Below are positions 170 through 47,509 of a DNA stretch of 64,000 bases, piece by piece (positions within the stretch are counted from its first letter, which is position 1; each line of letters opens with the position of its first letter). The position numbers and the translations under genes are program-made. The notes under the pieces were generated by a model that saw only the letters and a list, made by a program, of their open reading frames with translations, did no database searches and was not told where the DNA came from. Location: positions 124,001 through 188,000 of the IMG/VR virus record IMGVR_UViG_3300032245_001860, one strand, 5' to 3'.

Positions 170-622
170 ATGCCACAAAAAATATCTTCAGAAATTAACA
201 ATCTAATTAAAAAAGCAAAAATTTTAGATTCATTAGGAAAATTTAAAGAGTCAGATAATATTTTTGTAAAGTTATCCCAATATTACGTAGAGCAATCAGT
301 CACCAAAGTTCCATCTGTTCAATATTTTGAAATGGATGAAATTGCTGATGAGTACGAAGAAAATGAAAAAAACTATCGTACTAAAAAACCCAATCTTCGT
401 GTCCCTCAATATTTTGATTTAGGTGTTGGTGAAGATGAAGAAAACTTAGAGGGTAAACTCAACGGTCCTGATAGTGTTCCTGGTCCTGCTTATATAGACC
501 CAGGTAATCTTGCCTCAAGCCCATCAATGGCTGGAGATGTTGATTGCTTTACTTGGGAAGAAACTTACGAAAAGAATGTTGATGAAGGCAATGGATGGAA
601 AAATAGAATTCCATTGAGATAG
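170..622 (+). CDS. Hypothetical head-associated protein
   Basis: 150-aa ORF. N-terminal helix LIKKAKILDSLGKFKESDNIFVKLSQ followed by an acidic, Pro-rich region. Lies in the head gene block. Confidence 0.6.
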   Translation: MPQKISSEINNLIKKAKILDSLGKFKESDNIFVKLSQYYVEQSVTKVPSVQYFEMDEIADEYEENEKNYRTKKPNLRVPQYFDLGVGEDEENLEGKLNGPDSVPGPAYIDPGNLASSPSMAGDVDCFTWEETYEKNVDEGNGWKNRIPLR

Positions 623-630
623 GAGAAATT

Positions 631-1122
631 ATGCCAATTCCAATTAAACCAGTTCATTCATTAGATTTGCATGCTGAAATTTTTGATTCACCCTCAATGG
701 AAGGCTTAGGACTGTCAGACATCCAAATCCAACTTTTGGGTATGACCGCAGCACCTAAAAAAGAAGCATCTGTAAAATTAAGCGAAAGATACATTTCTAT
801 GCTTAAGGATATTGATAAAAACATTAACGAAGTTGTTACTGCTGCAAATGCTGCTGTTAATAACAAAGATGGAAAAGTTTGCACAGTTCCAGGTGAAATC
901 TCAGACAATGATCTTTTAGCACTTAAAACTGCAGGATTGATCAGTGGTTATGGCAGATCTGTTTCCTTGACAGATAAAGCAAAATTAGCTTTGAGAGATT
1001 TTTATCTTAGCACAGATACAACTAATGAATTCAGAAAATCAAGAACAAAAGAAAAATTTGATTTAAATGAAGCAAGAACAGTGAAGGTTTCAAACACAAA
1101 ATTTATACGTGTTGCAACTTGA
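631..1122 (+). CDS. Hypothetical protein, possibly read through into the downstream DUF192 domain
   Basis: SD AGGAG upstream; 163 aa; ends KFIRVAT-TGA, with the frame staying open to 1506. Confidence 0.7.
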   Translation: MPIPIKPVHSLDLHAEIFDSPSMEGLGLSDIQIQLLGMTAAPKKEASVKLSERYISMLKDIDKNINEVVTAANAAVNNKDGKVCTVPGEISDNDLLALKTAGLISGYGRSVSLTDKAKLALRDFYLSTDTTNEFRKSRTKEKFDLNEARTVKVSNTKFIRVAT

Positions 1123-1506
1123 CTGAGCAAATCTGACGAACTGGATGTTCGCTTTATAGCAAAAGATGATCATTCAAGGGCAAAAGGCTTAATGCATGCA
1201 AAGCCCTTAAATGAACTTGAAGTAGCATATTTTATATTTCCAACAGAAGATTGTCATTCATTTTGGAATAAAAATGTAGATTTTTCATTAACTTTAGCTT
1301 TTTTAGATAAAGATAATGAGATTGTTGATTTCAAAGACTTAGAAAAGCAAAGTCCTAAACTTGTTAGCCCAGATTCAAACAGAGTTAAATTTGTTGTAGA
1401 AGCTAATAAAGGATTATTCGAAAAACTTGGAATTAAAACTGGGGATAAGCTTATCCTTAAAAATAATAAACTTATAGTTGAAAAAAACCACAAAACAAAA
1501 CCTTAA
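1123..1506 (+). CDS. DUF192-family protein (ORF track starts it at 1192; homology extends back to 1123)
   Basis: Motifs RFIAKDDHSRAKGLM, FIF, SFWNKNVDFSLTLAFLD, VVEANKG and GIKTGDKL match DUF192. The RxxGLM motif starts upstream of the first ATG. Confidence 0.75.
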   Translation: MSKSDELDVRFIAKDDHSRAKGLMHAKPLNELEVAYFIFPTEDCHSFWNKNVDFSLTLAFLDKDNEIVDFKDLEKQSPKLVSPDSNRVKFVVEANKGLFEKLGIKTGDKLILKNNKLIVEKNHKTKP

Positions 1507-1596: not shown

Positions 1597-2604
1597 ATGG
1601 CTGATAGAATTTTCCCAAACAGATATCAAGAGGAACCTCTTGATTCTGACTTGGTCTACCAAGCAATTAACTGGGATAACTTTAACACCAAACTCGCAGA
1701 AGTTCAAAATGGTGTCAACGTACCAGAACTTCCAGCTGAGTTCAAAGAAGTTCTTGCTAAAAAGAAATCTGAAGACATGCCAGAAGAAGTTGAAGAAATG
1801 TTCAAAAACAAGAACAAAAGAGATGATGCAGATGCTGATGATCTTTCTGATGTTCCTGAGCAACTTCGTGAATTTGTAAAGAAGAAGCAAGACAAATCTA
1901 AGGGCAAGAAGTCCGAAGTAAAAGATGAAGAAGTCAAACCAGTTGAAACTGAAGAAGCTGGTTGGAAAAATGGCAAAAATATGAAGAAAGCTAATACTTT
2001 AGTTTTCAATCATCCTTCACAATTGTCAGCAGAAGCAGTAGAAGCTGCTATTGCAGAAGGTAATCAAGAATTAGCAAATGCTATTCTTGCTGCAAGACAT
2101 GAAAGAAGAGTCAGATTAGCTGGCAAGATTGAAACAAGAATTGCAGAAGAAACTGATAGATCTGTCAAGCTTGCGCAAAGAAGAGCTTACAGAGAAAATT
2201 TAGTTAAGATGGCAGCACAAGAAACTAAGAGTGTCAAGACTGCTAATACTGCCAAGAAGACTGAAACAGCAACAGAAGATGGTTTTGTTAAGGTTTCTAA
2301 TCTTGACAATTCTGCTAAGAAAGCTTTCGCATCTAAGGCCATTGCACAAGGTTTCCCAAAAGAATATGTTGATGCTATTTTAGGTGAATCACAGCCAGTT
2401 GTTGACAATACATCAGAAATCAGAAATGTCATGGCATCTGAATTATCTGAGAATGTAAAGAAAGCAGCTGTTTCTTCAATGGTCAAAGTTGCAACCCTTA
2501 CAGACGCTGATTATTCCAGAATTATTGATTACTGGAAGAATGAGCTTGGTTATGGCGATCAAGAGTGGATCGACGCACTCTTTACCAAAAAGTACGATAA
2601 GTAA
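1597..2604 (+). CDS. Head-associated/scaffold-like protein
   Basis: SD GAGGAG; 335 aa, charged and helical; three short P-x-x-hydrophobic-...-KK repeats; C-terminal DYWKNELGYG motif. Confidence 0.6.
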   Translation: MADRIFPNRYQEEPLDSDLVYQAINWDNFNTKLAEVQNGVNVPELPAEFKEVLAKKKSEDMPEEVEEMFKNKNKRDDADADDLSDVPEQLREFVKKKQDKSKGKKSEVKDEEVKPVETEEAGWKNGKNMKKANTLVFNHPSQLSAEAVEAAIAEGNQELANAILAARHERRVRLAGKIETRIAEETDRSVKLAQRRAYRENLVKMAAQETKSVKTANTAKKTETATEDGFVKVSNLDNSAKKAFASKAIAQGFPKEYVDAILGESQPVVDNTSEIRNVMASELSENVKKAAVSSMVKVATLTDADYSRIIDYWKNELGYGDQEWIDALFTKKYDK

Positions 2605-2618
2605 TTCCTCAAGATTAA

Positions 2619-2647
2619 TATCCCAGGAGGTTTATCCTCCTGGGATA
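2619..2647. terminator. Intergenic 12-bp perfect hairpin (terminator or RNA-processing site)
   Basis: TATCCCAGGAGG-TTTAT-CCTCCTGGGATA; no clear U-tract on the + strand. Confidence 0.55.
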
Positions 2648-2681
2648 AAATTGTAGGAAATAAATATCCAGGGAAATAAAA

Positions 2682-3497
2682 ATGAGTAAATTCAGAAGAG
2701 TACAAGAAACCGAAAACATACCAAATTTTATCACTAATAAATTTGTTGGTGCTTCTGTTGATATCGAAGAAGATCCGTATGCTGAACTTAAGAAAAATTC
2801 AACAGAAAATAGAATTAAGATTTCTAAACAACAAATTGGTATGACTAAGGAAGCTGCAAGTGTAAACAAACCTTGGGAAAAGATCTCTGGTGCATCAATG
2901 TACGATGATCTTCGCCCACAATCATTTGAAGAAAGACTTGCAAATCTTGAAGTTGGAGCTATCAGAAGATCTGATTATGCTTATGACGATGGTGATAATA
3001 CCAGAACTACAACAAGTGGCCTTAAAGCATTTTCAAGTGAAGATTATATGAATGCTATGCTATCAAGATCAGCTTCTATTTTTAATCCAGATATGATTGC
3101 AATATCTGAAGAATTTCTCAGTAGTCAAGAAACAACATCATCTCAAGCAGTTTTAGAACAATCTACAAGAAGAGAAGCAAAAGCATCAAAACATCAAGCT
3201 TGGGAAGAAAAGAATTTAGGAACTCTTAGACAATCTAAAGTTGTCACATCAAGAGCAAATTCAATCTTAAGAACTTCTGCTGAATCAGAATACAATTCTC
3301 AATTTGGAATGATCGACCCAAGTCAATTAGATCAAAGAGAATCAATGAGAGTTGCTAATCAAGAAAAGATTAGAGAACAAAGATTAGCTATTAAGAAAAA
3401 CTTTGATGAAGAAATTTTAAGAAATTCTCAACAAAGACCAAAGACATTATCAGAAATTTACAACAGCATTAATTTGGATTTTGAAGATTTAGATTAA
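2682..3497 (+). CDS. Hypothetical head-region protein
   Basis: 271-aa ORF, SD GGGA, tightly packed with the next gene. Confidence 0.65.
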   Translation: MSKFRRVQETENIPNFITNKFVGASVDIEEDPYAELKKNSTENRIKISKQQIGMTKEAASVNKPWEKISGASMYDDLRPQSFEERLANLEVGAIRRSDYAYDDGDNTRTTTSGLKAFSSEDYMNAMLSRSASIFNPDMIAISEEFLSSQETTSSQAVLEQSTRREAKASKHQAWEEKNLGTLRQSKVVTSRANSILRTSAESEYNSQFGMIDPSQLDQRESMRVANQEKIREQRLAIKKNFDEEILRNSQQRPKTLSEIYNSINLDFEDLD

Positions 3498-3498
3498 T

Positions 3499-4407
3499 AT
3501 GGAAAAGTTATCAAATATGCCAATTGGATCTAATCCAGCTACAGCACCTGAAGGAGCAATTAATAATCAATTGAATGCGCCAGCTGCTGGAATAACTCCT
3601 AAACAACTAAAAGATTTCTTGAACAAGCTTATCAGATACGGTAATAGGCCACCTAAAGAACTTTTAGAAGAATTAGGCAATTTGTCAACTTCAGATAAAA
3701 TTAAAAGCGACAAAATCAAAGATGAATTAAGAAAAATTGGCAATGCTTACACTCATGGTGGTATTGAAACAAAAGACCCATTAAGTGGAAAAAAAGATCC
3801 TACTGGCCACACATTAGCCAAAAGATTATTAGAAAAATTGCCAGGTTTAAGTCAAACCAATCAACATCAAAGATCTATAGAGGGAACAAACGTGTACAAC
3901 AACAGAATTGCACAAACTGTCAAAAAGAAGAAAAAGACAAGAGGAAATCCTTTCAGAGTTTTAATGGGTAAAGTTGGAAAATTGCTTGACCATGGTGTTG
4001 AAAAAAATGACATAGTTCGTTATCTTGCTAAATTGAAATATTGGAACAATGAAACTATAGAAAGAGCAGTAGATATTGTCAGAGATTATAATAAAAAGAA
4101 AAAGAAAGATACTGACAAATTCAAAGAAACAACCGAAAAAGAGGCTTCATCAAACACAAGAACTGTCGTAGCTGCCCTGGATTATGACAGAGAACCTGAT
4201 TTTCACAAAAAGTCAACAGGTGAACTTATTTACAGAGCTTGTTTCTTATTAGATGTTTTAGAAACTGACAAAGAAACTGTTCAACCATTAGATAAACCTA
4301 CTGTTGGCAAAAAAGAAGCCAAGGCAGAATTAGCACTTGTTAAAAAGGCACTTGTTGATAGAGGTTTAGATCAAGAAGAACTTTTACTTTTGGGTATAGG
4401 AAAATAA
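3499..4407 (+). CDS. Hypothetical head-region protein
   Basis: 302-aa ORF with basic patches, 1-nt gaps to neighbouring genes. Confidence 0.65.
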   Translation: MEKLSNMPIGSNPATAPEGAINNQLNAPAAGITPKQLKDFLNKLIRYGNRPPKELLEELGNLSTSDKIKSDKIKDELRKIGNAYTHGGIETKDPLSGKKDPTGHTLAKRLLEKLPGLSQTNQHQRSIEGTNVYNNRIAQTVKKKKKTRGNPFRVLMGKVGKLLDHGVEKNDIVRYLAKLKYWNNETIERAVDIVRDYNKKKKKDTDKFKETTEKEASSNTRTVVAALDYDREPDFHKKSTGELIYRACFLLDVLETDKETVQPLDKPTVGKKEAKAELALVKKALVDRGLDQEELLLLGIGK

Positions 4408-4408
4408 A

Positions 4409-6049
4409 ATGAGCGATAAATACAAAGTAAAAATACATACTCATAATCCAGAAGTTGCAGAAAAATTAGTTAATGGAACTGGCTTATTTCACATGCTCCA
4501 TGACACCATTGCTGGTCTTGGAAAACAATTAAATGAAAAAAGATTTATGCCAGCAGATTCCCCATTTTTTGCACTTACAAAATCTGATTTTGATATAGAT
4601 GACCCAATAGTTTCAAAGTTTTTTGACAATGGTGGTTTAGATAATGCTGTCAAAATTATCAAACTTCAACCCTCAGAAGCACATGGAAAAATGGTTGAGT
4701 GTTACAATGATCTTTACTCTTTCAGAACCGCTTTTGTAGCTAACAATTTACGTAAAGCCTATAATGCTTTACAAAATGCTATTGATTCTACTAATGATGC
4801 AGTTAGATTGGAAAGAATAGCAAATAAAGTTCAACAAAAATCTTCAGGTTATTGGCAAATTGAATCCTTAAATGCAATTGATGAAAGTTTAAAATTAGCA
4901 AATAGTTCTGAAACTAAAACATTAACATATGCCAGAGATTTAGTTTTATCTGGTGACAAAGACTTTTTTACAACTGCTTCAAAATTAGTAAAAAGTATTT
5001 TTGCTGAAGCATATCCAAAGGCTAATACAAGAGTCGCTTACACAACCTTAAGCACACAAGATAATGAACCTTTCTTAATGTGTCCAAAGGGCATTTATCA
5101 AGGCAAACATACTGTACCTATGGAAATCAGCAAATGTAGAGAAAACTGCATTGATTCAAGGGTAAGTAAAGACGGTGTAGTAACTTGTGCTTATCAAGAT
5201 TGGTTGAAAGTTGCATTCGAACCACATGATAAAGTTATGGCAAGATTATACGTCCATAGACATCCTGACAATGATGAAAATCCAATGGAAATTGCTGAGG
5301 GCGAAAGAGGTCATAAACTCAAGGATACAGATTTTGGATATGAAGCAAGATTTGATCATTCTGACCGTGGAGCTAATAAGTTAAGAGGAAAACAAAATCT
5401 TACAGAATCAAGAGAAAAACAACTTGATGATCTCAAATCCACTTCTTATGGTCATACTCGTGAAGATGAACCAAGAAAGAGACCTAAGCAAGCTCAAACT
5501 AATTCTACAAAAGTTATTGAAGATCAATTGCCAAGAAAACAACAAAAAGGTGATCATTTCTTAGAAGCTTTGCTAAATAAACTTAATAGAACAGAATCTG
5601 TTACTGATGAAGTTAGAGAAACTCAATTAGATGATAAGGGTCTTTACAATCACAGAGGCGAGATGGAAGAATCTTACCCTGTTCAATTAGAAAACAGAAA
5701 ACAAGAAAATGTAGATTATAAGGCTGAATTGAACAAAGATTTTGACGAGCCTGAAGAATCTGTTGCTCATTTGTTGAACAAGACTGCAAATAAGAAAGAT
5801 ACCACTCTTAATGGTGAACTTGATGAATCAAGAAGATACATCAAGACAGATGACACAAAAGAAATGCAGTTGAAAGAAAGAAGAACTATCAAGAAAGATG
5901 CTGATATTGATAAAAATATTGAATCTCTTTTAGACGAAGATGATGATTACCATCAATTTTCTGATGAAGACCTAAAGCATTTTGCTCATGAATTAGGGTT
6001 GGACAGCTATCTTGAAGATTCAAGAACTGACAACGATATAGAGTCTTAA
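4409..6049 (+). CDS. Head-region protein with a Cys cluster and repeated E-x-Q-L motifs
   Basis: 546 aa; CPKG...CRENC...CAY cluster; C-terminal repeats REKQLDD, IEDQLPR, RETQLDD, PVQLENR, EMQLKER. Confidence 0.65.
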   Translation: MSDKYKVKIHTHNPEVAEKLVNGTGLFHMLHDTIAGLGKQLNEKRFMPADSPFFALTKSDFDIDDPIVSKFFDNGGLDNAVKIIKLQPSEAHGKMVECYNDLYSFRTAFVANNLRKAYNALQNAIDSTNDAVRLERIANKVQQKSSGYWQIESLNAIDESLKLANSSETKTLTYARDLVLSGDKDFFTTASKLVKSIFAEAYPKANTRVAYTTLSTQDNEPFLMCPKGIYQGKHTVPMEISKCRENCIDSRVSKDGVVTCAYQDWLKVAFEPHDKVMARLYVHRHPDNDENPMEIAEGERGHKLKDTDFGYEARFDHSDRGANKLRGKQNLTESREKQLDDLKSTSYGHTREDEPRKRPKQAQTNSTKVIEDQLPRKQQKGDHFLEALLNKLNRTESVTDEVRETQLDDKGLYNHRGEMEESYPVQLENRKQENVDYKAELNKDFDEPEESVAHLLNKTANKKDTTLNGELDESRRYIKTDDTKEMQLKERRTIKKDADIDKNIESLLDEDDDYHQFSDEDLKHFAHELGLDSYLEDSRTDNDIES

Positions 6050-6050
6050 T

Positions 6051-6566
6051 ATGTGGTACAGAAAAGTTTTAGCATCATTGCCTGGACTATCTAATGCAGC
6101 AGGGCAAAATAAATCAATTTTAGATCAAGAAATTCAAGGCTTAAATGTTAGTGCAGAGCAATTATATCCTGAGCTTGAAGAAATGCTCAAAGAAATGAAT
6201 TTTGAACCTAAAGAATATGAAAAACTTCCTGATCATGCCAGAAGAAATATTTGGGATATCATAGTTCATAAGTACGACACTAATCTATATAACAATTTTG
6301 AAGATTCTGATACTCCAGGATTTGATGCTACTGAAGCAAGAAGACATTCACCTTACCATAGCAATCCATCTGAAACACCTATTGAAGAGCAGTTGGAAGC
6401 TACAAGACATGAAACTGTTGACCGTGAGCCAAACAATATGCTTCAAGCAGAAAAAGGCAATGGCGGTATGACTATGTTCAACGGAAAAGGTGTTTCACAG
6501 TATGCTTCTGGTAAGGGTGCAAGAATGTTCTATGACAATCTCCCTTCTAATCAGACATTGGTATAA
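6051..6566 (+). CDS. Hypothetical protein with an MWYRKVLA leader
   Basis: 171 aa, immediately upstream of the portal; contains IEEQLEATR. Confidence 0.65.
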   Translation: MWYRKVLASLPGLSNAAGQNKSILDQEIQGLNVSAEQLYPELEEMLKEMNFEPKEYEKLPDHARRNIWDIIVHKYDTNLYNNFEDSDTPGFDATEARRHSPYHSNPSETPIEEQLEATRHETVDREPNNMLQAEKGNGGMTMFNGKGVSQYASGKGARMFYDNLPSNQTLV

Positions 6567-6567: not shown

Positions 6568-6574
6568 ATATGTT

Positions 6575-8917
6575 ATGGCAACAAGAAACTCATTGGCATC
6601 AGCAATCAGAACATCAGCATATTCTGTCACTGGTGAATCTGCAAAAGGGTCTGGATTCAATCAAGATCGAAACTATGCAAACAGTAGAATAAATCCTGGT
6701 TTGGGACCGAGTGTCAGACAGGCTCAGTCTATGAACACTGTAACCACTTCTCCAAACTTTTATTCTCCGTTCCTTACCCCTTCATCATTTCAAATCCCAA
6801 ATGCACGAAGAGAAGTTTATCTTTGGGCTAACTGGTGGGTAAATAATGAGCCGAAAGTTGCTGCAGCCATTAACTTCTACACAAACTTTCCATTTTCAGG
6901 TTGGGAATTAGAATGTTCTTCTACATATGTAAAAGACTATTTTGAAAAACTTGTTGAAAAGTTAAACTTCCAAAAATGGCTTCCTCAAATTGCGCACACC
7001 TATTATCTTTTAGGTGATTCTTTTGTTCTTTTATCAATTGAATGCGAGCACTGTAATGGTAGCGGTTGGAATGAAAAGAAGAACGAAGACTGTACTCATG
7101 ATGGTGCGTCTTGGAAATCTATTTCTATCTTAAATCCTGACAGTGTGTTAAAAACCCCAGGAATGCTTGATCAAGAAGGCACTTATGTTTACAGACCAAG
7201 TGCAGAAGAAATTAGAGTTGTCAATGAAAGACAACCTAAAGAAATTTATGACTCAATTCCTGATAGTGTAAAAAGAATGATTTTGAAGGGTGATCCAATC
7301 AAGCTCAATCCTTTATCGATTCACCACTTTAAGCATGGATCAAATCCTTGGGAAGATTATGGAACGTCATTGATCAGACCATTATTTCCTATTCTCACAT
7401 ATAAGGATAAATTGCGTCAAGCTCAGTTTATGATTGCTGATAGATTAATTCTTCCTATCAAAGTTGTCAAAATTGGTTCTGATACTCGCCCAGCATCACA
7501 AGAAGATATTGATGGCGTACAAGATGAACTTGCTGCACTTGCTTCTGATCCTAACCTGACCCTCGTAACCCACCATAACTTTGACCTTGAATGGTATGGT
7601 GCAAATAGTAAGTTCTATGTTGTTACTCCAGAATTTGAAGAAATTAATTCAGAACTTTTAGATGGCTTGATGCTTTCTAAGGCTTTACTTAATGGTGAAG
7701 GACCAACTTATGGAAATGCACAAGTTGGCCTTATGGCAATGGCTCAAAGATTAGAGACATTCAGAAGAGAAGTAGCTCACTGGATTGAATTGAAAATATT
7801 TAGACCAGTTGCTGAGTGGAATGGATTTGTTGTTGAGGGAGAAAGAGGACAAGAAGAGATTATCTACCCAACAATAAAGTTTAATGATTTGCAACTAAGA
7901 GATGATTCGCAAAAACTTCAGATTATGGCTACTGCAAATCAACAAGGTGTTATTTCAAACACTTCGCTAATTGAAGCTTTTGGACTTGATGTTGACCAAG
8001 AAATTGAAAGACTAAGATTTGAACAAGGCGCAAGTTTTATGAAAGAAGGAAACTTTGGTGTTCCAAGTTTCTCTATGAACTTGCAATCAGGACCCGTCAC
8101 TGGGCAGGGTTTTGCAGGTCAACAAGCAGCTCCAGGCGCAGCTCCTCCTGGTGGAATGATGGGTGGAATGCCTGGGATGGAAGCTGGTGGAATGACACCC
8201 CCTATTGCATCATCAAAAGAAGAAAACTATCGTTTAGCATCTATTGTTATTAATCAACTTTACAATGACGCATTAGAAACAAAGAAAGAGCTTTATGGCA
8301 AAAGATATGCCTCAAAAACAATAAAGTCTGCTGCGCATGAAGGATTTATCCAATCAATTATGCCTGTCACTGGTAGAGGTATCCATGGTCCACTTCCTGA
8401 GAAATATGAAGGATTCAATAAAACATTAAGTCCTGAAATTCTTGGTGGTAGTCTTTGCTCTCCATTAAATATTGAAGCTAAATTCGAATATAGACTTGCA
8501 ATGAGTTCAAATGATGAAAATGTAAGAACAGCTTTCAAGCAAAAACAAGAAATGAATCAGCCAAGCTTATATACATCTATTGAAAAGAAACTTTATGGAT
8601 TGTTACTTTCATTAAACATGCCTTATTCTTTATTTGCTCAATACTCTGCAGGACCAACAGGTGATTACACTTTGGATGCAGCTATTCCACAATTGGGCAT
8701 TGGAATAGAAGCTGACGGAGAAATCTGGCATAATAATTTTGACAAGATTGCTAAAGATAAAAAAAGAGATAGTGAATTAGCAAACAATGGATGGATTATC
8801 TTAAGGTTCACAGACAAAGAATTAAATGATCATCCAAATGATGTCTTGAATGTAATTATGCAAGGTATTAGAAAAAGAACAGGACAATCTAATAGCCCAG
8901 AAGAACAAACATTATAA
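6575..8917 (+). CDS. Portal protein with a C-terminal DUF559/Vsr-like endonuclease domain
   Basis: Portal-like segments (EPKVAAAINFYTNFPF, IHHFKH...YGTSLIRP, LSKALLNGEGPTYGNAQV, RREVAHWIELKIFRPVAEWNGF) and position before protease/scaffold/MCP. C-terminus: SIEKKL...AQY...YTLDAAIP..GIGIEADGEIWH...DKKRD..L..NGWIILRF. Confidence 0.85.
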   Translation: MATRNSLASAIRTSAYSVTGESAKGSGFNQDRNYANSRINPGLGPSVRQAQSMNTVTTSPNFYSPFLTPSSFQIPNARREVYLWANWWVNNEPKVAAAINFYTNFPFSGWELECSSTYVKDYFEKLVEKLNFQKWLPQIAHTYYLLGDSFVLLSIECEHCNGSGWNEKKNEDCTHDGASWKSISILNPDSVLKTPGMLDQEGTYVYRPSAEEIRVVNERQPKEIYDSIPDSVKRMILKGDPIKLNPLSIHHFKHGSNPWEDYGTSLIRPLFPILTYKDKLRQAQFMIADRLILPIKVVKIGSDTRPASQEDIDGVQDELAALASDPNLTLVTHHNFDLEWYGANSKFYVVTPEFEEINSELLDGLMLSKALLNGEGPTYGNAQVGLMAMAQRLETFRREVAHWIELKIFRPVAEWNGFVVEGERGQEEIIYPTIKFNDLQLRDDSQKLQIMATANQQGVISNTSLIEAFGLDVDQEIERLRFEQGASFMKEGNFGVPSFSMNLQSGPVTGQGFAGQQAAPGAAPPGGMMGGMPGMEAGGMTPPIASSKEENYRLASIVINQLYNDALETKKELYGKRYASKTIKSAAHEGFIQSIMPVTGRGIHGPLPEKYEGFNKTLSPEILGGSLCSPLNIEAKFEYRLAMSSNDENVRTAFKQKQEMNQPSLYTSIEKKLYGLLLSLNMPYSLFAQYSAGPTGDYTLDAAIPQLGIGIEADGEIWHNNFDKIAKDKKRDSELANNGWIILRFTDKELNDHPNDVLNVIMQGIRKRTGQSNSPEEQTL

Positions 8918-9071: not shown

Positions 9072-12000
9072 ATGAAAAAGGTTGCAAAAGGTGGAGCAAT
9101 TACTATCAATAGTTTCTTAAATGAAGGTGATAGAAATGTAGCCAGAAATCACATGCTAAAGACAGCCTCCTCAAATATGAGAGAAGCTGCAAAAATTGGT
9201 TTGCAATCATTATATGCTGATCCGAAAGAAGTTTTAGAAAAATACAAAGATTTTGATATTGTTAAAGAAATGCAAGCTCGTAAAGGAGCTAAATTACTTT
9301 GGGTTAGAGCCAGAGCAATAGATGCAGATACTGTCAATGCAAATGGTGACTATTTTTCAAAAGAAGAACTTCTCAAGGAACATGAAATTAAGGGTGAAAA
9401 AATCCCTTCATATAAAACTTTTGAAGGCGTTCCAATTTACACTAACCACAAAAATGATGATATAGAACAAGCTAAAGGAATGGTTGTCTATGCAGAATGG
9501 GACGATAAAGAAAACTGTGTTTATTGTACCTTCTTTGTAGATGAAGAAGCTTATCCTGACATCGCAAGAAATATTAGAACTGGAGTAATTCATGATGTTT
9601 CTATGGGATGTTCTGTTGACTATGGTATTTGTTCAAAGTGTAAAAATAAAGCTTACACTGAAAAAGATTATTGTGAATGTTTGAAAAAATTTAAAGGCAA
9701 GACAGATCCTCAAAGTGGCAAAAAAGTTTATGAAGAAAACTACAAGTTGAAATTTATTGAACTTTCTTGTGTAGGTGATGGTGCTTTTGAAACTTGTGAA
9801 ATTCAAGAAATCTATGATGTAGATGATGTTTTAAGTGCTGCTGAAGATTTAGAAAAGAAAGCCAATGAAATATGTTCAAATATTGTTTTGGCTTTTGATG
9901 GTGCTCCTTCAAACCCAGCTGATAGATTGGCATATGAAAACTGTTTAAGAACCGCTCAATTTGCTTCTAAGACAGCAATAAAACTTGCTCAAAACGCTGG
10001 TACTTTAGTGGGTGGTCCTCTATTAGCCGGACCTGGTGCAAATCAAAATTCTACTGTATCAGCAGTTCTACAAGGTTTAGGTATTGATCCAAGATCAGCG
10101 CTTAATGTTTTAGACTTGATCAACTTATCACTTAACTTTCTTGAAGTTGGTGTTATGAATTTGTTTGCAAGAAAAGATAATGTTGACCTTACTCACGTTG
10201 GCAAGATTACTAAAGCAATGGCTGATTTACAGGGCACCATGCAAGATATGATTGATGATGGTGTTGATGTAGGATCTGGACAAAGACCACAACCAATCAA
10301 TGCAGGACAACAAACACAACAAGCTGTCGCACCTGCTCAAAATCCAACTAATGCTAATGTTGGATTAGCAAACTACACTAATACTGGAAATGTTGGGAGA
10401 ATTATGGATTTTTCAAATCCAATTGAGTCTAATCCAGTAGGTGGGGGTGTAGCCTTAGCAAGTTCAAATATTAATTTAGTTTGGGCTTCAAGAGATGGTA
10501 AAAGAGAAGTATTTGCCAGTACAAATAATAATGTTAGAGAACCATCAAGCAAAGTTTTAAGACTTACGGAAAATTTATTATCTTTAAAGAATGCACTTAA
10601 TGATAGTGAAATTCAAAAGAGAGTAGAAACAGTCATTAGAGTTTCTAATGAGAGAAATAAAAACATAAAAACTAATGCGCCTATTTTGGCGGAGGGCAGA
10701 AATCAAATGGATCATTTTGCAAAAATCGCATCAGAGCAAAGAAAAAAACTTGCTGCTGCTGTCACCATCGACTTTAAAGTTGAAGATGCTTCTGGCAATA
10801 GAGTTGTTTTATCTACTGATGGATCTATAACTGGATACACTGGTGGAAAAAGAACAGCTTGGGAACCTATTTTAACTGAAAATCAAATCAATATGATGGA
10901 AAGTGGTCAAGGTACAAGAGTTGCCGCTGAACTTTTAAATGAGTATGGTAAGTTTGTTAGAACTGCTTTGCTTGATGTTAAAGAAAGATTTGATGACAGA
11001 GAAAAGCAACTTGAAGAAGTAAGATCTGGAGAAGGCTACAATGGTAAATCCAGATACGATGCTATTTCTGAACAACATAAACCTGCTGCTAATGTTACAA
11101 GAGAAGAAGCTTTACAAGACAAGCAAACTGGCATGGGTGCTGATGATGTTAAAGAAAAATTGCTTGCTGACGCTGGACTTTATGGTAGAAAAGTTAAGGA
11201 TTTAGAAGTCAAGAAGTCTTTATTTACCTTAATTGATGAAGTAAATAAGGGTGTTCCAACTGAAGTTCTTGAAAAAAGATTGCAAGAATGTAGAGCGGAC
11301 GGCAAGGCTTCTGCTCATGAGATTATGACAGCAACAATAAATGCTTTGGGTAAAGCAGTTGTTGCTGCGATGGAAACTCCTAATACAATTATGAGAGTTG
11401 CACAAACTCTTGTAAATGAAGAAGCACTTCCTGAAATGGTTGGAACAGCTGCTGCTGCTGCACCAATGGATGAAGCAAATGCAGAAAAGGCAGAATTCTT
11501 TGGAACAGAAGAAGGCCCTATGGATTCTGTTACAGCAGTCCTTAAACAACTTGGAGCAGCTGTAAGTTCTGAAATCACTGCAAAAGATCTTTCTGATGCT
11601 TTGTCGGTTGCAGTTGAAGAAGGCGAAATCACAAAAGAAGGCGTTACAAGAATTGCTGAACTTTTGATGGCTGATGCTAATATTCCTGAAGAAGGGCTTG
11701 ATGTTGAAGCAACTCCATCAAAAAATGAAGAGCTTAAGCAAGCTTTGACAAGTGCAGTTGATTCTGATAAGAATTTAATTTCTAAAGAAGATCTTAAGTC
11801 CGCTATTTCTGCTATGGCAATGTCAACAGAAGAAGCTGGAGTTACACCAGACGAAGTTGTCGATACAGTTGACAGCATGCCTGAAAATCAACTTGTAGCT
11901 GCAATTAATAGAGCAAAAACTGCTTCAGCAACCGAAGCCAGATTGAGAGCAAGAGCAAGAAGAGAATTCTGGGGTGTCAAAATTGCCTCCACAAAAGATA

Positions 12001-13420: not shown

Positions 13421-15022
13421 ATGGAAAAAATGAAGAAAGCCACTAATCAAGATAAATTCAAGGCACTTCGTCTTGCTGAAATTAAGCTCACTGACCAAGA
13501 AGATTACAAAAATTGCGTGAAAGATATGACCAGAACAGCTTCCCTTGATAAGGCTGAAGCAAAAGTTGTAGCTGATGCAATTAGATCTAAGTATCTTCCT
13601 AATGTTCTCAGAGAAGCTGGATTTGAGCCAGTAGATGTAAAACCTATGGTTAACACTGATTCAGAGGCAGAAGAGACTACAGACTTCGCAGATGATGAAA
13701 ACAACGATGATATGGAAGAAATGCATCATTTTGAAGATGATGAAGAAGATTTAGAAGAAGATTTTGAAGAAGATTCAGACGAAGTAGACGATGAAGAAAC
13801 AGCCAAATTTGAAATAGAAGTTCCCGCTGATATGGTTGACGCCGCACAAAAAGCTGTGCAAGAGGCGCTCGACAATCTTCTTGGCGGAGAAGATGACATG
13901 GACATGGATGAAGAAGATGACATGGACGATGAAGATGAAGATCTTGGTGAAGACATGGAAGATGAAGACATGGACATGGAAGATGAAGATATGGAAGAAG
14001 ATTCCGAGCCAAATATGCACACATCAAGTACTGGAGTTAATAAAATGACAAAGCAAGCATTGGCTGCTCGCCGTGCTCAAAGAGAAGCTATCTTAAAGAA
14101 GATTGCTTCCGAAGAAGAGAAATATCCGGCGTCCAGCTCATTTAAGTATAACGAAGATTTAGTAAATATGGAAGGCGAAGTTGATTATCCTTCTATGACA
14201 ATGGAAGGCAGTGAAGGAAACAGCCTTAAGGAACAAAACCCAACTTGGGCAGATCAAAAAGTTCCTACAAACAACGCTGATTCATTACAATTCCCAGATG
14301 TCACTAAGCCAATGAAATTTGAGGGATCTGGTGACGGATCTTTAGAATACACAGTAGATTGGGAATCATTAGAAAACCCTTCTGAGGGATTAGAAGATGT
14401 AAATCTTTTTGAAGTTCCTTCACAAATGCCATCAATGCCACATAAGACAACTGTTCCTAACTCAAGAGTTGCATCAACTGAGAAGGTTGCTGTTCAGTGT
14501 ACTACATGTGGACATAAAATGGAAATGTCAGAAGAAGAAATGGCTTCTGAAAATACCAAATGTCCAAATTGTGACAAAGATGATGACATGGAAGAAGATG
14601 AAGAAACAGATGTTGAATCTAATACAGCAGTAAAACCACTTCCTGGTGGCTATGTTGATATCAAGACTTCTGCTTCATTAGACACTGCAAGAATTAAGAC
14701 TGCTTATTCTTGCTCAAGCAAGTTAGCACTTGCTGGAATCATTGAAAGTTCAGACATTGACTCATATGCTGAGCAAATGCTTAACGATGATCTTAAAGCT
14801 GACGCAATGATTAGACAAACTAAACTTTTACTTTCTGCTGCTCAAGCATCAACTGAAAGAGTTGCTGCAGCTGCTGCTGAAAGAATGAGTGTTAGAACCG
14901 CTTCTGCAAACGGAATTTCAACATCCCCTGCATTCAATGGTAGCTCTGCTGCTAATAGTGCAGCTCTCGACATTCAAGGTGCCTTAAGAGGTACTTGGAC
15001 AATGCCACAAATCGAGGATTAA
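13421..15022 (+). CDS. Capsid scaffolding protein (acidic)
   Basis: 533 aa, long D/E/M tracts, a CxxC..CxxC finger, Ala-rich helical C-terminus, positioned between protease and capsid genes. Confidence 0.65.
   Translation: MEKMKKATNQDKFKALRLAEIKLTDQEDYKNCVKDMTRTASLDKAEAKVVADAIRSKYLPNVLREAGFEPVDVKPMVNTDSEAEETTDFADDENNDDMEEMHHFEDDEEDLEEDFEEDSDEVDDEETAKFEIEVPADMVDAAQKAVQEALDNLLGGEDDMDMDEEDDMDDEDEDLGEDMEDEDMDMEDEDMEEDSEPNMHTSSTGVNKMTKQALAARRAQREAILKKIASEEEKYPASSSFKYNEDLVNMEGEVDYPSMTMEGSEGNSLKEQNPTWADQKVPTNNADSLQFPDVTKPMKFEGSGDGSLEYTVDWESLENPSEGLEDVNLFEVPSQMPSMPHKTTVPNSRVASTEKVAVQCTTCGHKMEMSEEEMASENTKCPNCDKDDDMEEDEETDVESNTAVKPLPGGYVDIKTSASLDTARIKTAYSCSSKLALAGIIESSDIDSYAEQMLNDDLKADAMIRQTKLLLSAAQASTERVAAAAAERMSVRTASANGISTSPAFNGSSAANSAALDIQGALRGTWTMPQIED
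13889..14002 (+). repeat. Coding micro-repeat (GAAGAT/GACATG units) giving an EDDMDM acidic tract
   Basis: Visible tandem degenerate hexamers. Confidence 0.8.
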
Positions 15023-46100: not shown

Positions 46101-46531
46101 AAGATATTGAAATAGAAACAAAGAACTACGGAATTTTACCAAGTGCTGACACTCTTGATTATGATCCAAAAAGAATGATTGCAAGCATGAGAGCACAGTT
46201 GCAAAAAGTATTTGAGAAAATTCAGGGCATGCAAACTATATATTATAAATTATTACAAAATCCTCAAGATTTTGGAGGCATCATACCAGCATTGAGAACT
46301 AATTCTGCAAATAAATTTTTAAAATTAGCAAAGTTTGAAAAAGTTGAAAACTTAAATCAAGAATCTAAAGAAGTAGAATCTGACCAAAGATTTAGAGACT
46401 ATTGGGATAAAGAATTAGGTTATGGTCCATGGGGTACTACTGTGGATGAAAAACCTGAACATTCTGATAAAACTTATGAAGAAGAAAAAAAACTTCATCC
46501 TCAAAGAACTTCTAAATTTAAGAAAATCTAA
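43172..46531 (+). CDS. Large alpha-helical virion protein (internal/ejection protein or tape-measure candidate)
   Basis: 1119 aa, helical, with an Ala/Gly-rich hydrophobic segment (AAGVGVIAFTAFG); C-terminal DYWDKELGYG. Confidence 0.5.
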   Translation: MFQKISAPKKFKDFFKRNPSPPAPGDVDTPPTKTPKEKDPVASGAAGAATGAAVSAVSDLANKLMSSKNPADVFIGKVMDNAKRQGENAEQLQIELGEREVLISQLLISIPEPLLAKYFDEFLFQKDIPWTATREFMQKAINAEKQGSSARDVLDFALVFYDKRRNYGNTLYIIDTALDLQPSMRNVNIFQYLKESLQGIRKTGLNFLLLGPENLDNAIVLNKLMGMVLARGSEDIEALRREYQKSKDQLQRKREVADRFRGIYDIMMSMEFQSALKRNVQFVTEQFALSANDPEVQSFARILYDIKLGQQFRSEIFASLEGRQTAEKSPGLAEQNARPSTRTTSTNLKFVKAQVAQTKLNPEFVKNFTNYIIRLQQGASGLLMKCENPKPNEKQLADEVKGLISSANINFTDAIRLLKSQNINFKDVYDLYYAAMKKFSTVDSIQKQYASTTTAKTDATNFRFAQNPVNTPPGVAVNVTGDSSGAGGGNGKFLSDEAAKVANTIFKGTAAGVGVIAFTAFGDLKTALAAGTALYLQQKNENALKIAKEAGIEPPVDETPQYVLEDAAEALKALGANDLQQKEFLANDQFISQVEATVNAMERRLVLVIDAQVKTADSNVETPLESPEKVDKLYRDFMAYLRQANQYCSRQIDLVNFITKNSKNPTVKMKLGSINQYQAKVGEKVETVRSKISEYASLTEIISNVQSQKFLLVKIKELMPQLEKYLSTGLSVADVLGSEGGVLDKIKQYIDLEKDSYFKLFKKWQDLVAKFPNLNFNAANAPETLEGQSQVNVPTSVAPTTTVSEGVSVQGTNTSEGGDLVGYQRSASLQFSNLMFEKNVKVAAVDPQQQAKYNYYINRMKDPNINLQSLVRALDSDATFTDAGLKLLARNAILQKSVSQFGASLTQRPAYEGSYTNDQGQPVAPPNQQTTQPVGQTVNQPATPPQGAAGVGSTTPGRELSTPAELSLYTDVKNAYKDIEIETKNYGILPSADTLDYDPKRMIASMRAQLQKVFEKIQGMQTIYYKLLQNPQDFGGIIPALRTNSANKFLKLAKFEKVENLNQESKEVESDQRFRDYWDKELGYGPWGTTVDEKPEHSDKTYEEEKKLHPQRTSKFKKI

Positions 46532-46552
46532 TGATTTAGTATAATTATTTAC

Positions 46553-47509
46553 ATGGAAGATAAAAGCATCAGTTTTTTGAGATATGTAAAAGTAGCTCAA
46601 GAATCAGATGCTTTTTTTGAGTCTGAGCAATTTTGTCCATTTATTCAAGTTCAACTATCTACTTCTCACTCAACTATTCCATTAGAAGCAAATTTCTATA
46701 CTGCTGGAAATACAAATAATCCTGAAGACTATACTTTGCCAGATATTAGTGATACAGTTTCTCCTAAAAAACTTATCAGATTGAATGCTTTCAATTCTAA
46801 TTTGAATGACAAGATTACAACTTATGAATTTGAAAATGATAAAGAAGTTGTTCAAGAAGAAATATTTGAACCTTTTGTAAATGAAGAAGCCAAGAGACTT
46901 TTAGCTTTTATGAGAAATAGACCAAAGCAAAAGTCTAAAAACATTAACACACATTTATCATTGGGCTCTTCAAATTATAGTGAACATATTTTTGAAATTA
47001 GGTCCAGGAATTTTGAAGAGAAAAAAAGTGAATTTTCTTATGAAGAAAATGAAACTGTTACATTAAGCAATGGCACAAAAGTTACTTCAAGATCTAAAAA
47101 ACCAACAGTAAATAAAGTCGATAATGTTACTAATGTAAATAACACTCAAGAAATAAATAATAAAATTGAAAATCAAAGGATAGAATATAAGTCTAACAAT
47201 ATTAGCTATGACTTATATAATCAAAGTTTTCCAACAAATATAGATTTTACTAACAATTTTAATACAACTAATATAGTTCAAGATATAAAAACAGAAATTA
47301 TTCAAGAAGTGAATTCAAGTATAACAAAGCTTGAGAATACTTTTGTTAATCAATCAGTCACAAGAAATGAAATAACACAAGTTGAGAATAATATAATCAA
47401 AGTTATTGAAGAAAAAATAGTTGAAAGAGATTCAAGATTATTAGAAAAAATTGAAGAAAAAACAAAGAAGGATTTGAAATCTTTTAGTAGAGATTTTCTA
47501 AACAGCTAA
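46553..47509 (+). CDS. Hypothetical protein, N/E/I-rich C-terminus
   Basis: 318 aa; TATAAT 7 nt upstream of the ATG. Confidence 0.6.
   Translation: MEDKSISFLRYVKVAQESDAFFESEQFCPFIQVQLSTSHSTIPLEANFYTAGNTNNPEDYTLPDISDTVSPKKLIRLNAFNSNLNDKITTYEFENDKEVVQEEIFEPFVNEEAKRLLAFMRNRPKQKSKNINTHLSLGSSNYSEHIFEIRSRNFEEKKSEFSYEENETVTLSNGTKVTSRSKKPTVNKVDNVTNVNNTQEINNKIENQRIEYKSNNISYDLYNQSFPTNIDFTNNFNTTNIVQDIKTEIIQEVNSSITKLENTFVNQSVTRNEITQVENNIIKVIEEKIVERDSRLLEKIEEKTKKDLKSFSRDFLNS

What the first reader, a model, noticed from the sequence alone, without database searches (positions are those of the whole stretch)
170..46620. Recurring [KR]-x-A(Q/S/A) motif and WY[KR]K leaders: candidate protease-linked capsid cargo-addressing system
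Seen: head-region and several distant proteins repeat the same short basic motif, often at N-termini or domain borders. Examples: FVKLSQ (170); FIRVAT (631); MKKAN, VKMAAQ, VKTAN, VKVAT (1597); NRIAQ (3499); TRVAY, PKQAQ, NKTAN (4409); MWYRKVLA (6051); VRQAQ, YRLAS, KRYAS (portal); MKKVAK, LKTASS, LRTAQ, IKLAQ, AKIASE, VKIAST, ARYAQ (protease); TRTASL, KKIASE, SRVAST, VRTASA (scaffold); MWYKKA (NlpC/P60); HKKIAQ (40460); VKAQVAQ, FRFAQ, VKVAA (43172); YVKVAQ (46553). It looks far rarer in the sugar enzymes and fibre genes. Established: large-phage prohead proteases cut many head proteins at short motifs (T4 gp21 at I/L-x-E, phiKZ gp175 at S/A/G-x-E). Inference: this protease has a different, basic-residue specificity, and the motif or leader tags unrelated domains (peptidoglycan hydrolase, nuclease, DUF192) for packaging and release inside the head.
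Basis: partly seen in the sequence, partly recalled or inferred. Interest (0 to 1): 0.78.

Follow-up and report, generated by a model that had tools for sequence, protein, structure and literature searches.

The report
Protease cut-site code and cargo tag
An uncultivated 316-kb phage and its relatives carry a statistically solid short motif (Lys/Arg-x-Ala-Ser/Gln) in their head proteins, and a matching six-residue start (Met-Trp-Tyr-Lys/Arg-x-Ala) on about ten unrelated proteins. Together these most likely form the cut-site code of the capsid protease and a tag that loads proteins into the capsid.

Summary
The motif is real, but only in the head module. [KR]-x-A-[QSNYT] occurs 40 times against about 11 expected in seven head proteins (z about 8). 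This survives shuffling within 10-residue blocks. The rest of the window is at chance (28 vs 27).

Many sites are kept in 15-22 orthologues, with K/R swaps and a free x position. In 115 giant homologues of the 1405-aa protein the motif is 2.8-fold enriched (1317 vs 476), while three control patterns sit at 1.0. In 65 single-domain homologues the sites pile up just before and just after the protease domain.

That domain has the T4 gp21 / herpesvirus assemblin fold (Z 10.4), with an invariant Ser177 and a nearly invariant His126.

Ten proteins of the 316-kb genome start MWY[KR]. Seven of these continue x-A and one x-S; an eleventh starts MSWYRLAQ. Only two of the eleven are paralogues. Related huge phages carry 5-12 such starts each.

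Best reading: a prohead serine protease that cuts [KR]-x-A↓[S/Q/N], plus a T4-CTS-like N-terminal tag. Cleavage and encapsidation are inferred, not shown. The DUF192 call was not reproduced.

The parts
9072..13289 (+). 1405-aa polyprotein: a disordered N-terminal peptide (aa 1-39), a prohead serine protease domain (aa about 45-250, nt 9204-9821), then about 1150 aa of mostly helical scaffold-like sequence ending in two zinc ribbons.
   Evidence: phrog_18299 'head maturation protease', E 3e-16. AlphaFold2 model with pLDDT 85.9. Best solved match is T4 gp21 5JBL (Foldseek prob 1.0; VIA-align Z 10.4), followed by herpesvirus proteases at Z 7-9.5. The model of aa 240-1405 is mostly helical with long low-confidence stretches.
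9447..9602 (+). Candidate catalytic pair: His126 (nt 9447-9449, in N-H) and Ser177 (nt 9600-9602, in D-V-S-M-G).
   Evidence: Ser177-Met-Gly is invariant and Asn125-His126 nearly invariant in 22 homologues down to 34% identity. Weak Pfam Peptidase_S78 hits in 2 members.
9159..9191 (+). Motif sites KTAS (aa 30) and REAA (aa 37) in the disordered peptide upstream of the protease domain.
   Evidence: Kept in 16/16 orthologues. pLDDT below 50 for aa 1-39. Distant homologues show a peak of sites just before the domain.
9855..9992 (+). Motif sites KKAN (aa 262), RTAQ (aa 293) and KLAQ (aa 304) just after the protease domain. These resemble the herpesvirus release site.
   Evidence: Kept in 15/16, 14/16 and 16/16 orthologues. 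In 65 distant homologues, 83 sites fall within 0-60 aa after the domain end.
10722..12566 (+). Further conserved sites in the scaffold-like part: KIAS 551, KLAA 559, RVAA 616, RVAQ 775, KTAS 949, KIAS 970, RYAQ 1162.
   Evidence: Each kept in 15-16 of 16 orthologues, with K/R swaps and a variable x position. Coordinates.
13421..15022 (+). 533-aa scaffold-like protein with conserved sites RTAS (aa 38), KIAS (aa 227) and RTAS (aa 492). The last lies 39 aa before a conserved C-terminal tail, like the herpesvirus maturation site.
   Evidence: 6 sites vs 1.1 expected. Sites kept in 15/15 orthologues. Alignments of both termini.
6575..8917 (+). Portal protein (core aa 58-490) with a C-terminal DUF559/Vsr-like nuclease domain (aa 669-765, nt 8579-8869). 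Conserved sites: R-x-A at aa 48, RLAS at aa 553 (nt 8231) and RYAS at aa 577 (nt 8303). The last two lie in the linker between the two domains.
   Evidence: Pfam Portal_Mu at 1.5e-9 and DUF559 at 5e-8; phrog_16240 at 2e-35. Site 553 is kept in 18/19 orthologues (KLAS, RLAS, KFAS, KVAS) and site 577 in 19/19 (RTAS, RYAS, RFAS, RLAS), where flanking identity is only 0.42-0.53.
1597..6049 (+). Four head-module proteins of unknown function (1597-2604, 2682-3497, 3499-4407, 4409-6049). All but 3499-4407 carry conserved sites, e.g. KLAQ 191; RVAN 223; RKAY 115, RIAN 136, RVAY 208, KQAQ 360, KTAN 458.
   Evidence: Sites kept in 19-22 of 21-22 orthologues, with x variable and flank identity 0.39-0.75. 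The two sites in 3499-4407 are not conserved.
6051..6566 (+). 171-aa protein just upstream of the portal that starts MWYRKVLAS. It is a leader-bearing protein inside the head module.
   Evidence: 35 of the 36 related loci have an orthologue starting MWY[KR] (MWYKQVLAQ, MWYRKVVS, MWYRIAKD, MWYRIVKAQ); the 36th locus lacks the region.
23687..24322 (+). 211-aa NlpC/P60 peptidoglycan peptidase that starts MWYKKAF.
   Evidence: Pfam NLPC_P60 at 4.5e-19. Homologues down to 48% identity start MWY[KR], with one exception at 58% (P0173). Three more distant partial matches start MWYK, MWYS and MWYR, and a fourth carries MWYS after ten residues. Bacterial C40 homologues start with signal-peptide-like or other unrelated sequences, and several carry LysM domains.
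263..280 (+). FVKLSQ in ORF 170-622. This is a degenerate site with Ser in place of Ala.
   Evidence: Aligns to FEKIAQ, FNKFAQ or FEKVAQ in 17 of 21 distinct orthologue sequences.
1102..1119 (+). FIRVAT, six residues from the C-terminus of ORF 631-1122.
   Evidence: Aligns to FKKVGS, FRKVGS, FKKVAS or FKKIAT in relatives. The small residue at the Ala position varies among A and G.
15757..16611 (+). Major capsid protein (284 aa). It has no motif site, so no sign of cleavage. Listed as context.
   Evidence: phrog_2522 at 5e-67. 0 sites. 96-99% identical in relatives.

Best explanation
The window holds the head module of an uncultivated 316-kb phage.

Proposed mechanism:
- The protein at 9072-13289 is a polyprotein with an N-terminal prohead serine protease of the T4 gp21 / HK97 / herpesvirus assemblin fold, fused to about 1150 aa of scaffold-like sequence.
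- This protease recognises [hydrophobic]-x-[K/R]-x-[A, rarely S/G]-[S/Q/N/Y] and cuts after the small residue (P3 = K/R, P1 = Ala).
- By doing so it frees itself from the polyprotein at sites on both sides of its domain.
- It chops the scaffold part and the 533-aa scaffold-like protein. One of these cuts lies 39 aa from the C-terminus of the 533-aa protein.
- It trims the portal N-terminus and detaches the nuclease domain fused to the portal C-terminus.
- It processes several small head proteins.

The leader:
- Ten proteins of the genome begin M-W-Y-[K/R], most continuing x-A. This is the shortest N-terminal peptide that can hold positions P6 to P1 of such a site.
- The leader most likely works like the T4 capsid targeting sequence. 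It brings unrelated enzymes into the assembling prohead and is then clipped off, leaving the cargo free in the capsid for delivery with the DNA.

Shown here: the motif, its enrichment, its conservation and its placement at domain borders; the protease fold and the invariant Ser177 and nearly invariant His126; the leader, its modularity and its spread through a clade.

Inferred: that the motif is cut, where the cut falls, and that leader proteins are packaged.
For: 1. Enrichment is confined to head proteins and is robust to local composition.
2. Motif K/R and Ala columns are more conserved than other K/R and Ala columns of the same proteins (0.87 vs 0.73, p 0.007; 0.77 vs 0.66, p 0.02). The x column is average. 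Many sites are islands in poorly conserved linkers.
3. In 115 giant homologues (one per 50%-identity cluster) [KR].A[QSNYT] is 1317 vs 476 expected, while A.[KR], [KR]A and [KR]..A sit at 0.99-1.04.
4. In the 79 most distant homologues, K.A is the top pair pattern apart from Cys pairs (2001 vs 1122, z 26). The dipeptide AS is 1439 vs 903. P1' is Ser 2.8-fold. P5 is Met 3.4-fold, Trp 2.5-fold and Leu 2.4-fold, which fits M-W-Y-K-x-A.
5. In 65 single-domain homologues of at least 1000 aa, sites pile up just before and within 60 aa after the protease domain and are sparser inside it (0.47 vs 0.78 per 100 aa).
6. The fold matches T4 gp21 (Z 10.4) and herpesvirus proteases. Ser177 is invariant and His126 nearly invariant.
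7. T4 gp21 (L/I-x-E) and SPN3US gp245 (A-x-E) read P3-x-P1 (PMC9026906, PMC10052503). Herpesvirus polyproteins have protease plus scaffold in one chain and cut after Ala at a release site and a maturation site, e.g. YLQA-T and VQA-S (PMC4498786).
8. Leader: all 10 MWY[KR] strings in six frames are ORF starts. Upstream DNA is not conserved. Tyr, K/R and Ala codons vary.
9. Only one paralogue pair exists among the 11 leader proteins. Their domains are unrelated.
10. The leader DNA pattern occurs 12 times in a 358-kb relative and 5-9 times in four more distant genomes of 300-441 kb, against 0-1 for the reversed control. Smaller, incomplete records have 1-5.
11. All five distant genomes tested carry the protease polyprotein. 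54 of 73 pattern hits in IMG/VR are true ORF starts.
12. Phage homologues of the NlpC/P60 enzyme keep the leader, while bacterial ones start with unrelated sequences, some signal-peptide-like, and several carry LysM domains.
Against: - No protein-level data exist: no virion proteome, no neo-N-termini, no enzyme assay.
- In the AlphaFold2 model of aa 240-1405 (mean pLDDT 62), several conserved sites lie inside predicted helices rather than exposed loops.
- Some sites in the conserved portal core (aa 281, 305) may be structural, not cut.
- The residue after the leader's Ala is not always S/Q/N (F, I, K and E occur). In the protein at 6051 the Ala is two residues later (MWYRKVLAS), so the leader and the internal motif are not identical.
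- A six-residue tag is shorter than the 10-residue T4 CTS.
- Leader genes are scattered through the genome rather than sitting with the head genes.
- Relatives that share the K-x-A signal (phage G, mycobacteriophage Alice) lack the MWY leader. The two features are therefore separable.
Confidence: 0.6

Rival explanations
1. The motif is a binding or structural motif, not a cut site. For example, it could be a repeated basic contact between scaffold or core proteins and the capsid interior, the portal or DNA. The MWY leader could be a docking peptide that is never removed.
For: Several sites lie in predicted helices. Scaffold proteins do use short basic helices to bind coat proteins (general knowledge). 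There is no direct evidence of cleavage.
Against: A strict small residue two positions after K/R, followed by Ser/Gln, is the pattern of a protease pocket that needs a small P1. Sites cluster at both ends of the protease domain across 65 distant homologues. Sites also sit in linkers between unrelated domains, such as portal and nuclease. No periodic spacing was noticed among the predicted fragment lengths (not formally tested).
Confidence: 0.15
2. The internal motif is the protease cut site, but the MWY[K/R] leader serves another purpose. It could be a processing-dependent activation switch (zymogen control timed to late infection), a stability signal, or a sorting tag for some other destination. 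In that case the tagged proteins are not capsid cargo.
For: Leader genes are dispersed through the genome. Phage G and mycobacteriophage Alice share K-x-A but lack the leader. The residue after the leader is variable.
Against: The leader contains the same [K/R]-x-A core, and Trp/Met at P5 is also favoured at internal sites. One leader protein is encoded directly upstream of the portal in every relative examined that covers that region. The prohead protease is expected to be active only inside proheads (general knowledge of this protease class). The domain set (cell-wall peptidase, Nudix, PcfJ-like) suits early-acting injected proteins. The precedent is the T4 CTS (PMC9026906).
Confidence: 0.2
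3. Chance, composition or a nucleotide-level signal. On this view the motif reflects Ala/Lys-rich composition or codon bias, and ATGTGGTAYARR is an RNA or DNA element at gene starts.
For: The genome is AT-rich and Lys-rich. K and R in the leader are nearly always AAA or AGA in this genome.
Against: z stays at 8 or above under block shuffles. Permuted control patterns are flat, apart from a mild A.R excess in the head set. The rest of the window is at chance. Upstream DNA is not conserved. TAC/TAT, AAA/AAG/AGA/AGG and all Ala codons occur. K/R swaps are conservative at the protein level. The reversed-pattern control gives 0-1 hits.
Confidence: 0.03

Closest known systems
T4 prohead protease gp21 with the capsid targeting sequence (CTS) of the internal proteins IPI, IPII, IPIII and Alt
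   Same: The protease has the same fold (Z 10.4 to 5JBL). A short N-terminal peptide is shared by unrelated proteins and contains the protease's own motif. Many head proteins are processed, including the portal and scaffold. Autoprocessing occurs at the ends of the protease.
   Different: The motif is [K/R]-x-A, not L/I-x-E; [LIV].E and [AGS].E are not enriched here (ratios 1.18 and 0.96). The leader is 6 residues, not 10, with a different sequence. The protease is fused to a scaffold-like polyprotein of more than 1100 aa. The capsid protein shows no sign of cleavage. Nothing has been shown experimentally.
Herpesvirus pUL26 (assemblin plus scaffold) with release and maturation sites cut after Ala
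   Same: An N-terminal protease and a C-terminal scaffold sit in one chain. There is a site cluster right after the protease domain and a site about 40 aa from the C-terminus of a scaffold protein. Ala is inferred at P1 and Ser at P1'. The fold matches at Z 7-9.5.
   Different: P3 is basic here and hydrophobic in herpesviruses. There are many more sites per chain. The catalytic third residue was not examined. This is a bacterial virus with a separate 533-aa scaffold-like protein, not an in-frame nested gene.
phiKZ gp175 and SPN3US gp245 giant-phage prohead proteases with ejection-protein propeptides
   Same: These are large phages in which one protease cuts many head and ejected proteins at a three-residue P3-x-P1 motif, with Ser favoured at P1' (PMC10052503).
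   Different: Their motif is (S/A/G)-x-E or A-x-E. Their propeptides are long and protein-specific, not one shared six-residue start. Their protease is not fused to a giant scaffold.
Giant protease fusions of cultured phages (mycobacteriophage Alice gp90, 1511 aa; phage G gp19 region)
   Same: Alice has the same gene order (portal ... protease fusion, small protein, capsid protein). K.A is the top pair pattern in Alice gp90 (19 vs 8.8). Some phage G head proteins show mild K.A excess.
   Different: Only 30-36% identity. No MWY leader is present. No cleavage motif has been published for them in the papers searched.

Membership tests
Prohead serine protease of the gp21 / HK97 (S78) / herpesvirus assemblin fold | Characteristic protease fold | tested here: met
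   AlphaFold2 model with pLDDT 85.9. Top Foldseek hit is T4 gp21 5JBL. VIA-align Z 10.4 over 130 residues, then more than 20 herpesvirus protease entries at Z 7-9.5.
Prohead serine protease of the gp21 / HK97 (S78) / herpesvirus assemblin fold | Conserved catalytic Ser and His | tested here: inconclusive
   Ser177 is invariant and His126 nearly invariant in 22 homologues. Their superposition on the catalytic residues of gp21 was not checked, and no activity was measured.
Prohead serine protease of the gp21 / HK97 (S78) / herpesvirus assemblin fold | Sequence match to curated family models | tested here: inconclusive
   phrog_18299 'head maturation protease' at E 3e-16. Pfam Peptidase_S78 matches only weakly (E 0.0067) in 2 of 22 homologues, and the window protein itself has no Pfam hit.
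Prohead serine protease of the gp21 / HK97 (S78) / herpesvirus assemblin fold | Gene placed between the portal and capsid genes | tested here: met
   Portal 6575-8917, protease 9072-13289, capsid protein 15757-16611.
T4-type capsid targeting sequence system | One short N-terminal peptide shared by otherwise unrelated proteins | tested here: met
   10 MWY[KR] starts plus 1 MSWY start. Only one paralogue pair. Unrelated Pfam domains.
T4-type capsid targeting sequence system | The peptide ends in the cut motif of the prohead protease | tested here: inconclusive
   The leader holds [K/R]-x-A, the core enriched in head proteins, and Trp at P5 fits the family-wide preference. Whether it is cut is unknown, and the next residue varies.
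T4-type capsid targeting sequence system | Tagged proteins are found inside capsids, and the tag is sufficient for packaging | not testable with these tools
   The phage is uncultivated and no virion proteome was available.
Herpesvirus-type protease-scaffold polyprotein | Release site right after the protease domain and a maturation site near the scaffold C-terminus | tested here: met
   As motif positions only. Sites lie at aa 262, 293 and 304. In 65 homologues, 83 sites fall within 60 aa after the domain end. [KR]TAS lies 39 aa from the C-terminus of the 533-aa protein in 15/15 orthologues.
T4 gp21 / phiKZ gp175 cleavage specificity (Glu at P1) | Enrichment of L/I-x-E or S/A/G-x-E in the substrates | tested here: not met
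   [LIV].E ratio is 1.18 and [AGS].E ratio 0.96 in 115 homologues, against 2.77 for [KR].A[QSNYT].

The most novel reading that the evidence does not exclude
A whole clade of uncultivated huge phages (about 260-440 kb) uses a capsid-cargo address that can be read from sequence. Any protein starting M-W-Y-[K/R]-x-A would be loaded into the prohead, possibly by docking in the substrate groove of the still-inactive protease polyprotein, and then released by a cut after Ala. The injected proteome of these phages could then be listed from genome sequence alone. The protease family would share Ala-Ser cutting with herpesviruses rather than Glu cutting with T4.
Probability: 0.4. Interest if true: 0.8.

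Novelty: new variant of a known kind. Interest (0 to 1): 0.68.

Why it matters
Prohead-protease motifs and capsid targeting sequences have been worked out experimentally in only a few cultured phages, such as T4, phiKZ and SPN3US. Here a different code can be read directly from sequence, and it holds across at least 115 protein clusters of giant protease polyproteins.

If the code is real, it would do three things:
- Predict the mature ends of head proteins in many uncultivated huge phages.
- List their likely injected proteins, which here include a cell-wall peptidase, a Nudix-HAD enzyme, PcfJ-like proteins and a portal-borne nuclease. These are candidates for host takeover or anti-defence.
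- Offer a six-residue tag for loading foreign proteins into large capsids.

It would also link phage and herpesvirus maturation more closely, because both would have a protease-scaffold polyprotein cut after Ala.

Tried and rejected
- **Composition artefact.** Rejected by whole-protein and 10-40-residue block shuffles and by permuted control patterns.
- **Nucleotide-level signal at gene starts.** Rejected. Upstream DNA is not conserved, codons vary and reversed controls are empty.
- **Leader proteins as one paralogous family.** Rejected. Only one pair is related.
- **T4 or phiKZ type Glu motifs.** Not enriched.
- **ClpP or S49 type protease.** Not supported. The fold is gp21/assemblin.
- **Direct sequence match to solved structures or Pfam for the protease.** Nothing useful. 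Fold search was needed.
- **MWY leader in phage G and mycobacteriophage Alice.** Absent.
- **Orthologues of the NlpC/P60 protein in five related huge phages.** None found. Homologues were found in the large protein database instead.
- **Using the AlphaFold2 model of aa 240-1405 to ask whether sites are exposed.** Inconclusive. Mean pLDDT is 62, with sites both in helices and at helix ends next to disordered stretches.
- **Literature searches** for a published K-x-A motif, for MWYK/MWYR, or for phage G cleavage sites. Nothing relevant in the held library.
- **DUF192 claim.** No Pfam hit in the window ORFs tested, including 6051-6566.
- **N-terminal sites other than MWY.** The excess is modest. 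With MWY included, 23 strict-motif sites start in the first 30 residues against 10.7 expected.

Full report
**Context.** The window is bases 124001-188000 of a single 315,852-bp virus record. Bases 1-17,000 hold a head module on the + strand:
- small ORFs of unknown function
- a portal at 6575-8917 (phrog_16240, E 2e-35; Pfam Portal_Mu)
- a 1405-aa protein at 9072-13289, whose residues 52-244 match head maturation protease families
- a 533-aa protein at 13421-15022
- a 223-aa protein
- a 284-aa major capsid protein at 15757-16611

The nearest cultured relative by portal is Bacillus phage G, at 30% identity. IMG/VR holds 36 related loci with portals 66-97% identical.

- A blind scan of all short patterns over seven head proteins ranks R.A (44 vs 16) and R.AQ (8 vs 0.6) highest among the patterns with enough counts.
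- For [KR].A[QSNYT], the head set gives 40 vs 11 (z 8.8). The other 39 ORFs give 28 vs 27. Most neighbouring patterns ([KR]A, [KR]..A, A.K) are flat; A.R is mildly raised (26 vs 15.5).
- Shuffling only within 10-residue blocks keeps z at 8.5.
- Sugar and fibre genes are at baseline, not depleted.
The KVAQ near the start of 46553 is not kept in its one orthologue.
- FVKLSQ in ORF 170 corresponds to F-x-K-x-A-Q in most relatives. FIRVAT in ORF 631 corresponds to [KR]-[VI]-[GA]-[ST]. Together these suggest that the Ala position tolerates Ser or Gly.

**Conservation.** In alignments with 15-22 distinct orthologues, many sites are kept as a motif while K and R swap and x varies. Often this happens where the flanks are only 40-55% conserved. 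Examples:
- portal 553: KLAS, RLAS, KFAS, KVAS
- portal 577: RTAS, RYAS, RFAS, RLAS
- 4409 protein 115: RYAY, RKAY, RTAY, RHAY
- polyprotein 304, 551, 775, 970 and 1162

Over all sites, motif K/R and Ala columns are more conserved than other K/R and Ala columns (p 0.007 and 0.02). The x column is average.

**Independent replication.** A full-library search with the first 300 residues found 2674 clusters at E below 0.001. Most of the best 150 are proteins of 1000-2600 aa with the protease domain at the N-terminus.
- In the 115 that are at least 700 aa, [KR].A[QSNYT] is 1317 vs 476 expected. Nearly every member shows a 2-5-fold excess. A.[KR], [KR]A and [KR]..A are at 0.99-1.04.
- In the 79 most distant members, a blind pair scan ranks K.A first after Cys pairs (2001 vs 1122). 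It also finds AS enriched (1439 vs 903).
- Around [KR].A in that set, the next residue is Ser 2.8-fold, x prefers T/L/V/I, and the residue two before K/R is Met 3.4-fold, Trp 2.5-fold or Leu 2.4-fold.
- Two huge phages with only 45-47% protease identity show the same signal in their 2003-2008-aa polyproteins (17 vs 6.1 and 20 vs 5.7).
- Mycobacteriophage Alice gp90 (1511 aa, same gene order) has K.A as its top pair.

**Where the sites sit.**
- In 65 single-domain homologues of at least 1000 aa, sites are sparse inside the protease domain (0.47 vs 0.78 per 100 aa). They peak just before it and in the 60 residues after it.
- In the window protein these are KTAS 30 and REAA 37, in a segment modelled as disordered, and KKAN 262, RTAQ 293 and KLAQ 304.
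- The 533-aa protein has an invariant [KR]TAS 39 residues before a conserved C-terminal tail.
- The portal has two invariant sites between its core and a C-terminal DUF559 nuclease domain.
- The capsid protein has none.

**The enzyme.** An AlphaFold2 model of residues 1-300 (pLDDT 85.9) matches T4 gp21 best (Foldseek prob 1.0; VIA-align Z 10.4). Many herpesvirus proteases follow at Z 7-9.5. Ser177 (in DVSMG) is invariant and His126 nearly invariant across 22 homologues.

T4 gp21 (L/I-x-E) and SPN3US gp245 (A-x-E) read a P3-x-P1 motif (PMC9026906, PMC10052503). Herpesvirus enzymes of the same fold cut after Ala, at a release site and a maturation site in a protease-scaffold polyprotein, e.g. 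YLQA-T and VQA-S (PMC4498786). By this analogy I infer P3 = K/R, P1 = Ala and a cut before Ser/Gln/Asn. This step is inference.

**The leader.**
- Genome-wide, all ten MWY[KR] strings in any frame are ORF starts. Seven continue x-A, one continues x-S, and the protein at 6051 has its Ala two residues later. One more protein starts MSWYRLAQ.
- From the genome's rough Trp and Tyr frequencies, about 0.15 such starts would be expected in 322 ORFs. This estimate is my own; no script computed it.
- Upstream DNA differs and codons vary, so selection acts on the peptide.
- The proteins are unrelated except for one pair. They include two PcfJ-like proteins, a Nudix plus HAD fusion and an NlpC/P60 peptidase.
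- A 358-kb relative has 12 such starts, five of them in adjacent genes. Four more distant genomes of 300-441 kb have 5-9; smaller, incomplete records have 1-5. Reversed-pattern controls give 0-1.
- All five distant genomes tested carry the polyprotein.
- 54 of 73 exact pattern hits in 2.9 million viral contigs are true ORF starts.
- Phage homologues of the NlpC/P60 enzyme keep MWY[KR] down to 48% identity (one exception). Bacterial homologues start instead with unrelated sequences, some signal-peptide-like, and several carry LysM domains.
- The leader is the shortest peptide that can supply P6-P1, and its Trp fits the P5 preference seen at internal sites.

**Interpretation and limits.** The simplest account is a prohead protease code plus a T4-CTS-like tag, in a herpesvirus-like protease-scaffold arrangement. 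Nothing here shows cleavage or packaging.
- The model of residues 240-1405 is of modest quality and places several sites within helices.
- The leader and the internal motif are similar, not identical.
- Phage G and Alice share K-x-A but lack the leader.
- No paper in the held library describes this motif or leader. That library is incomplete.

I rate this a new variant of a known kind of system. It is well supported as a sequence feature and moderately supported as a mechanism.

Noticed in passing
window 8579-8869 (portal aa 669-765): The portal carries a C-terminal DUF559/Vsr-like endonuclease domain (Pfam E 5e-8). Full-length portals of relatives have similar total length (766-798 aa). A nuclease fused to a portal and possibly released inside the capsid is unusual.
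   Followed up: partly
window 15757-16611: The 284-aa capsid protein is 96-99% identical in relatives whose portal, protease and scaffold are only 55-70% identical. This suggests very strong constraint or recent exchange of this one gene.
   Followed up: no
L135/L138 (G007:C1:80242-82266); also P0009, P0013, P0014, P0024 and others: In many homologues the protease domain match is split near query residue 181, just after the catalytic DVSMGC segment. In G007 the split spans about 1.1 kb within one open frame. This looks like an intein inserted at the active site.
   Followed up: no
window 9630-9680 and 12760-13240: A Cys cluster (C187, C190 and C201 invariant) is inserted in the protease domain right after the catalytic Ser. 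Two zinc-ribbon motifs close the polyprotein. C..C is the most enriched pair in the family.
   Followed up: no
G001:C1:226884-229228 (loci L062-L066): Five neighbouring genes of the 358-kb relative all start MWY[KR]. This is a cluster of leader-bearing genes, reminiscent of the internal-protein genes of T4-like phages.
   Followed up: no
genome 30402-33894 (outside the window): Three small proteins start with similar helices ending in K-[IT]-A-N (…SSLIKIANTLD, …ASLNKIANELD, …AKLLKTANDLD). They are possible small internal proteins with an N-terminal site.
   Followed up: no
window 16385-17434 and 17427-23651: The ORF at 16385 overlaps the end of the capsid gene by 226 nt, and its family match begins at aa 110, so its true start is probably later. 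A block of sugar-nucleotide and glycosyl enzymes sits between the capsid gene and the tail genes.
   Followed up: no
L145 (Mycobacterium phage Alice 42678-47213): Alice gp90, annotated 'hypothetical protein', is a 1511-aa protease fusion of the same family and gene order. Public annotations of this gene in cluster C mycobacteriophages mostly miss the protease.
   Followed up: partly
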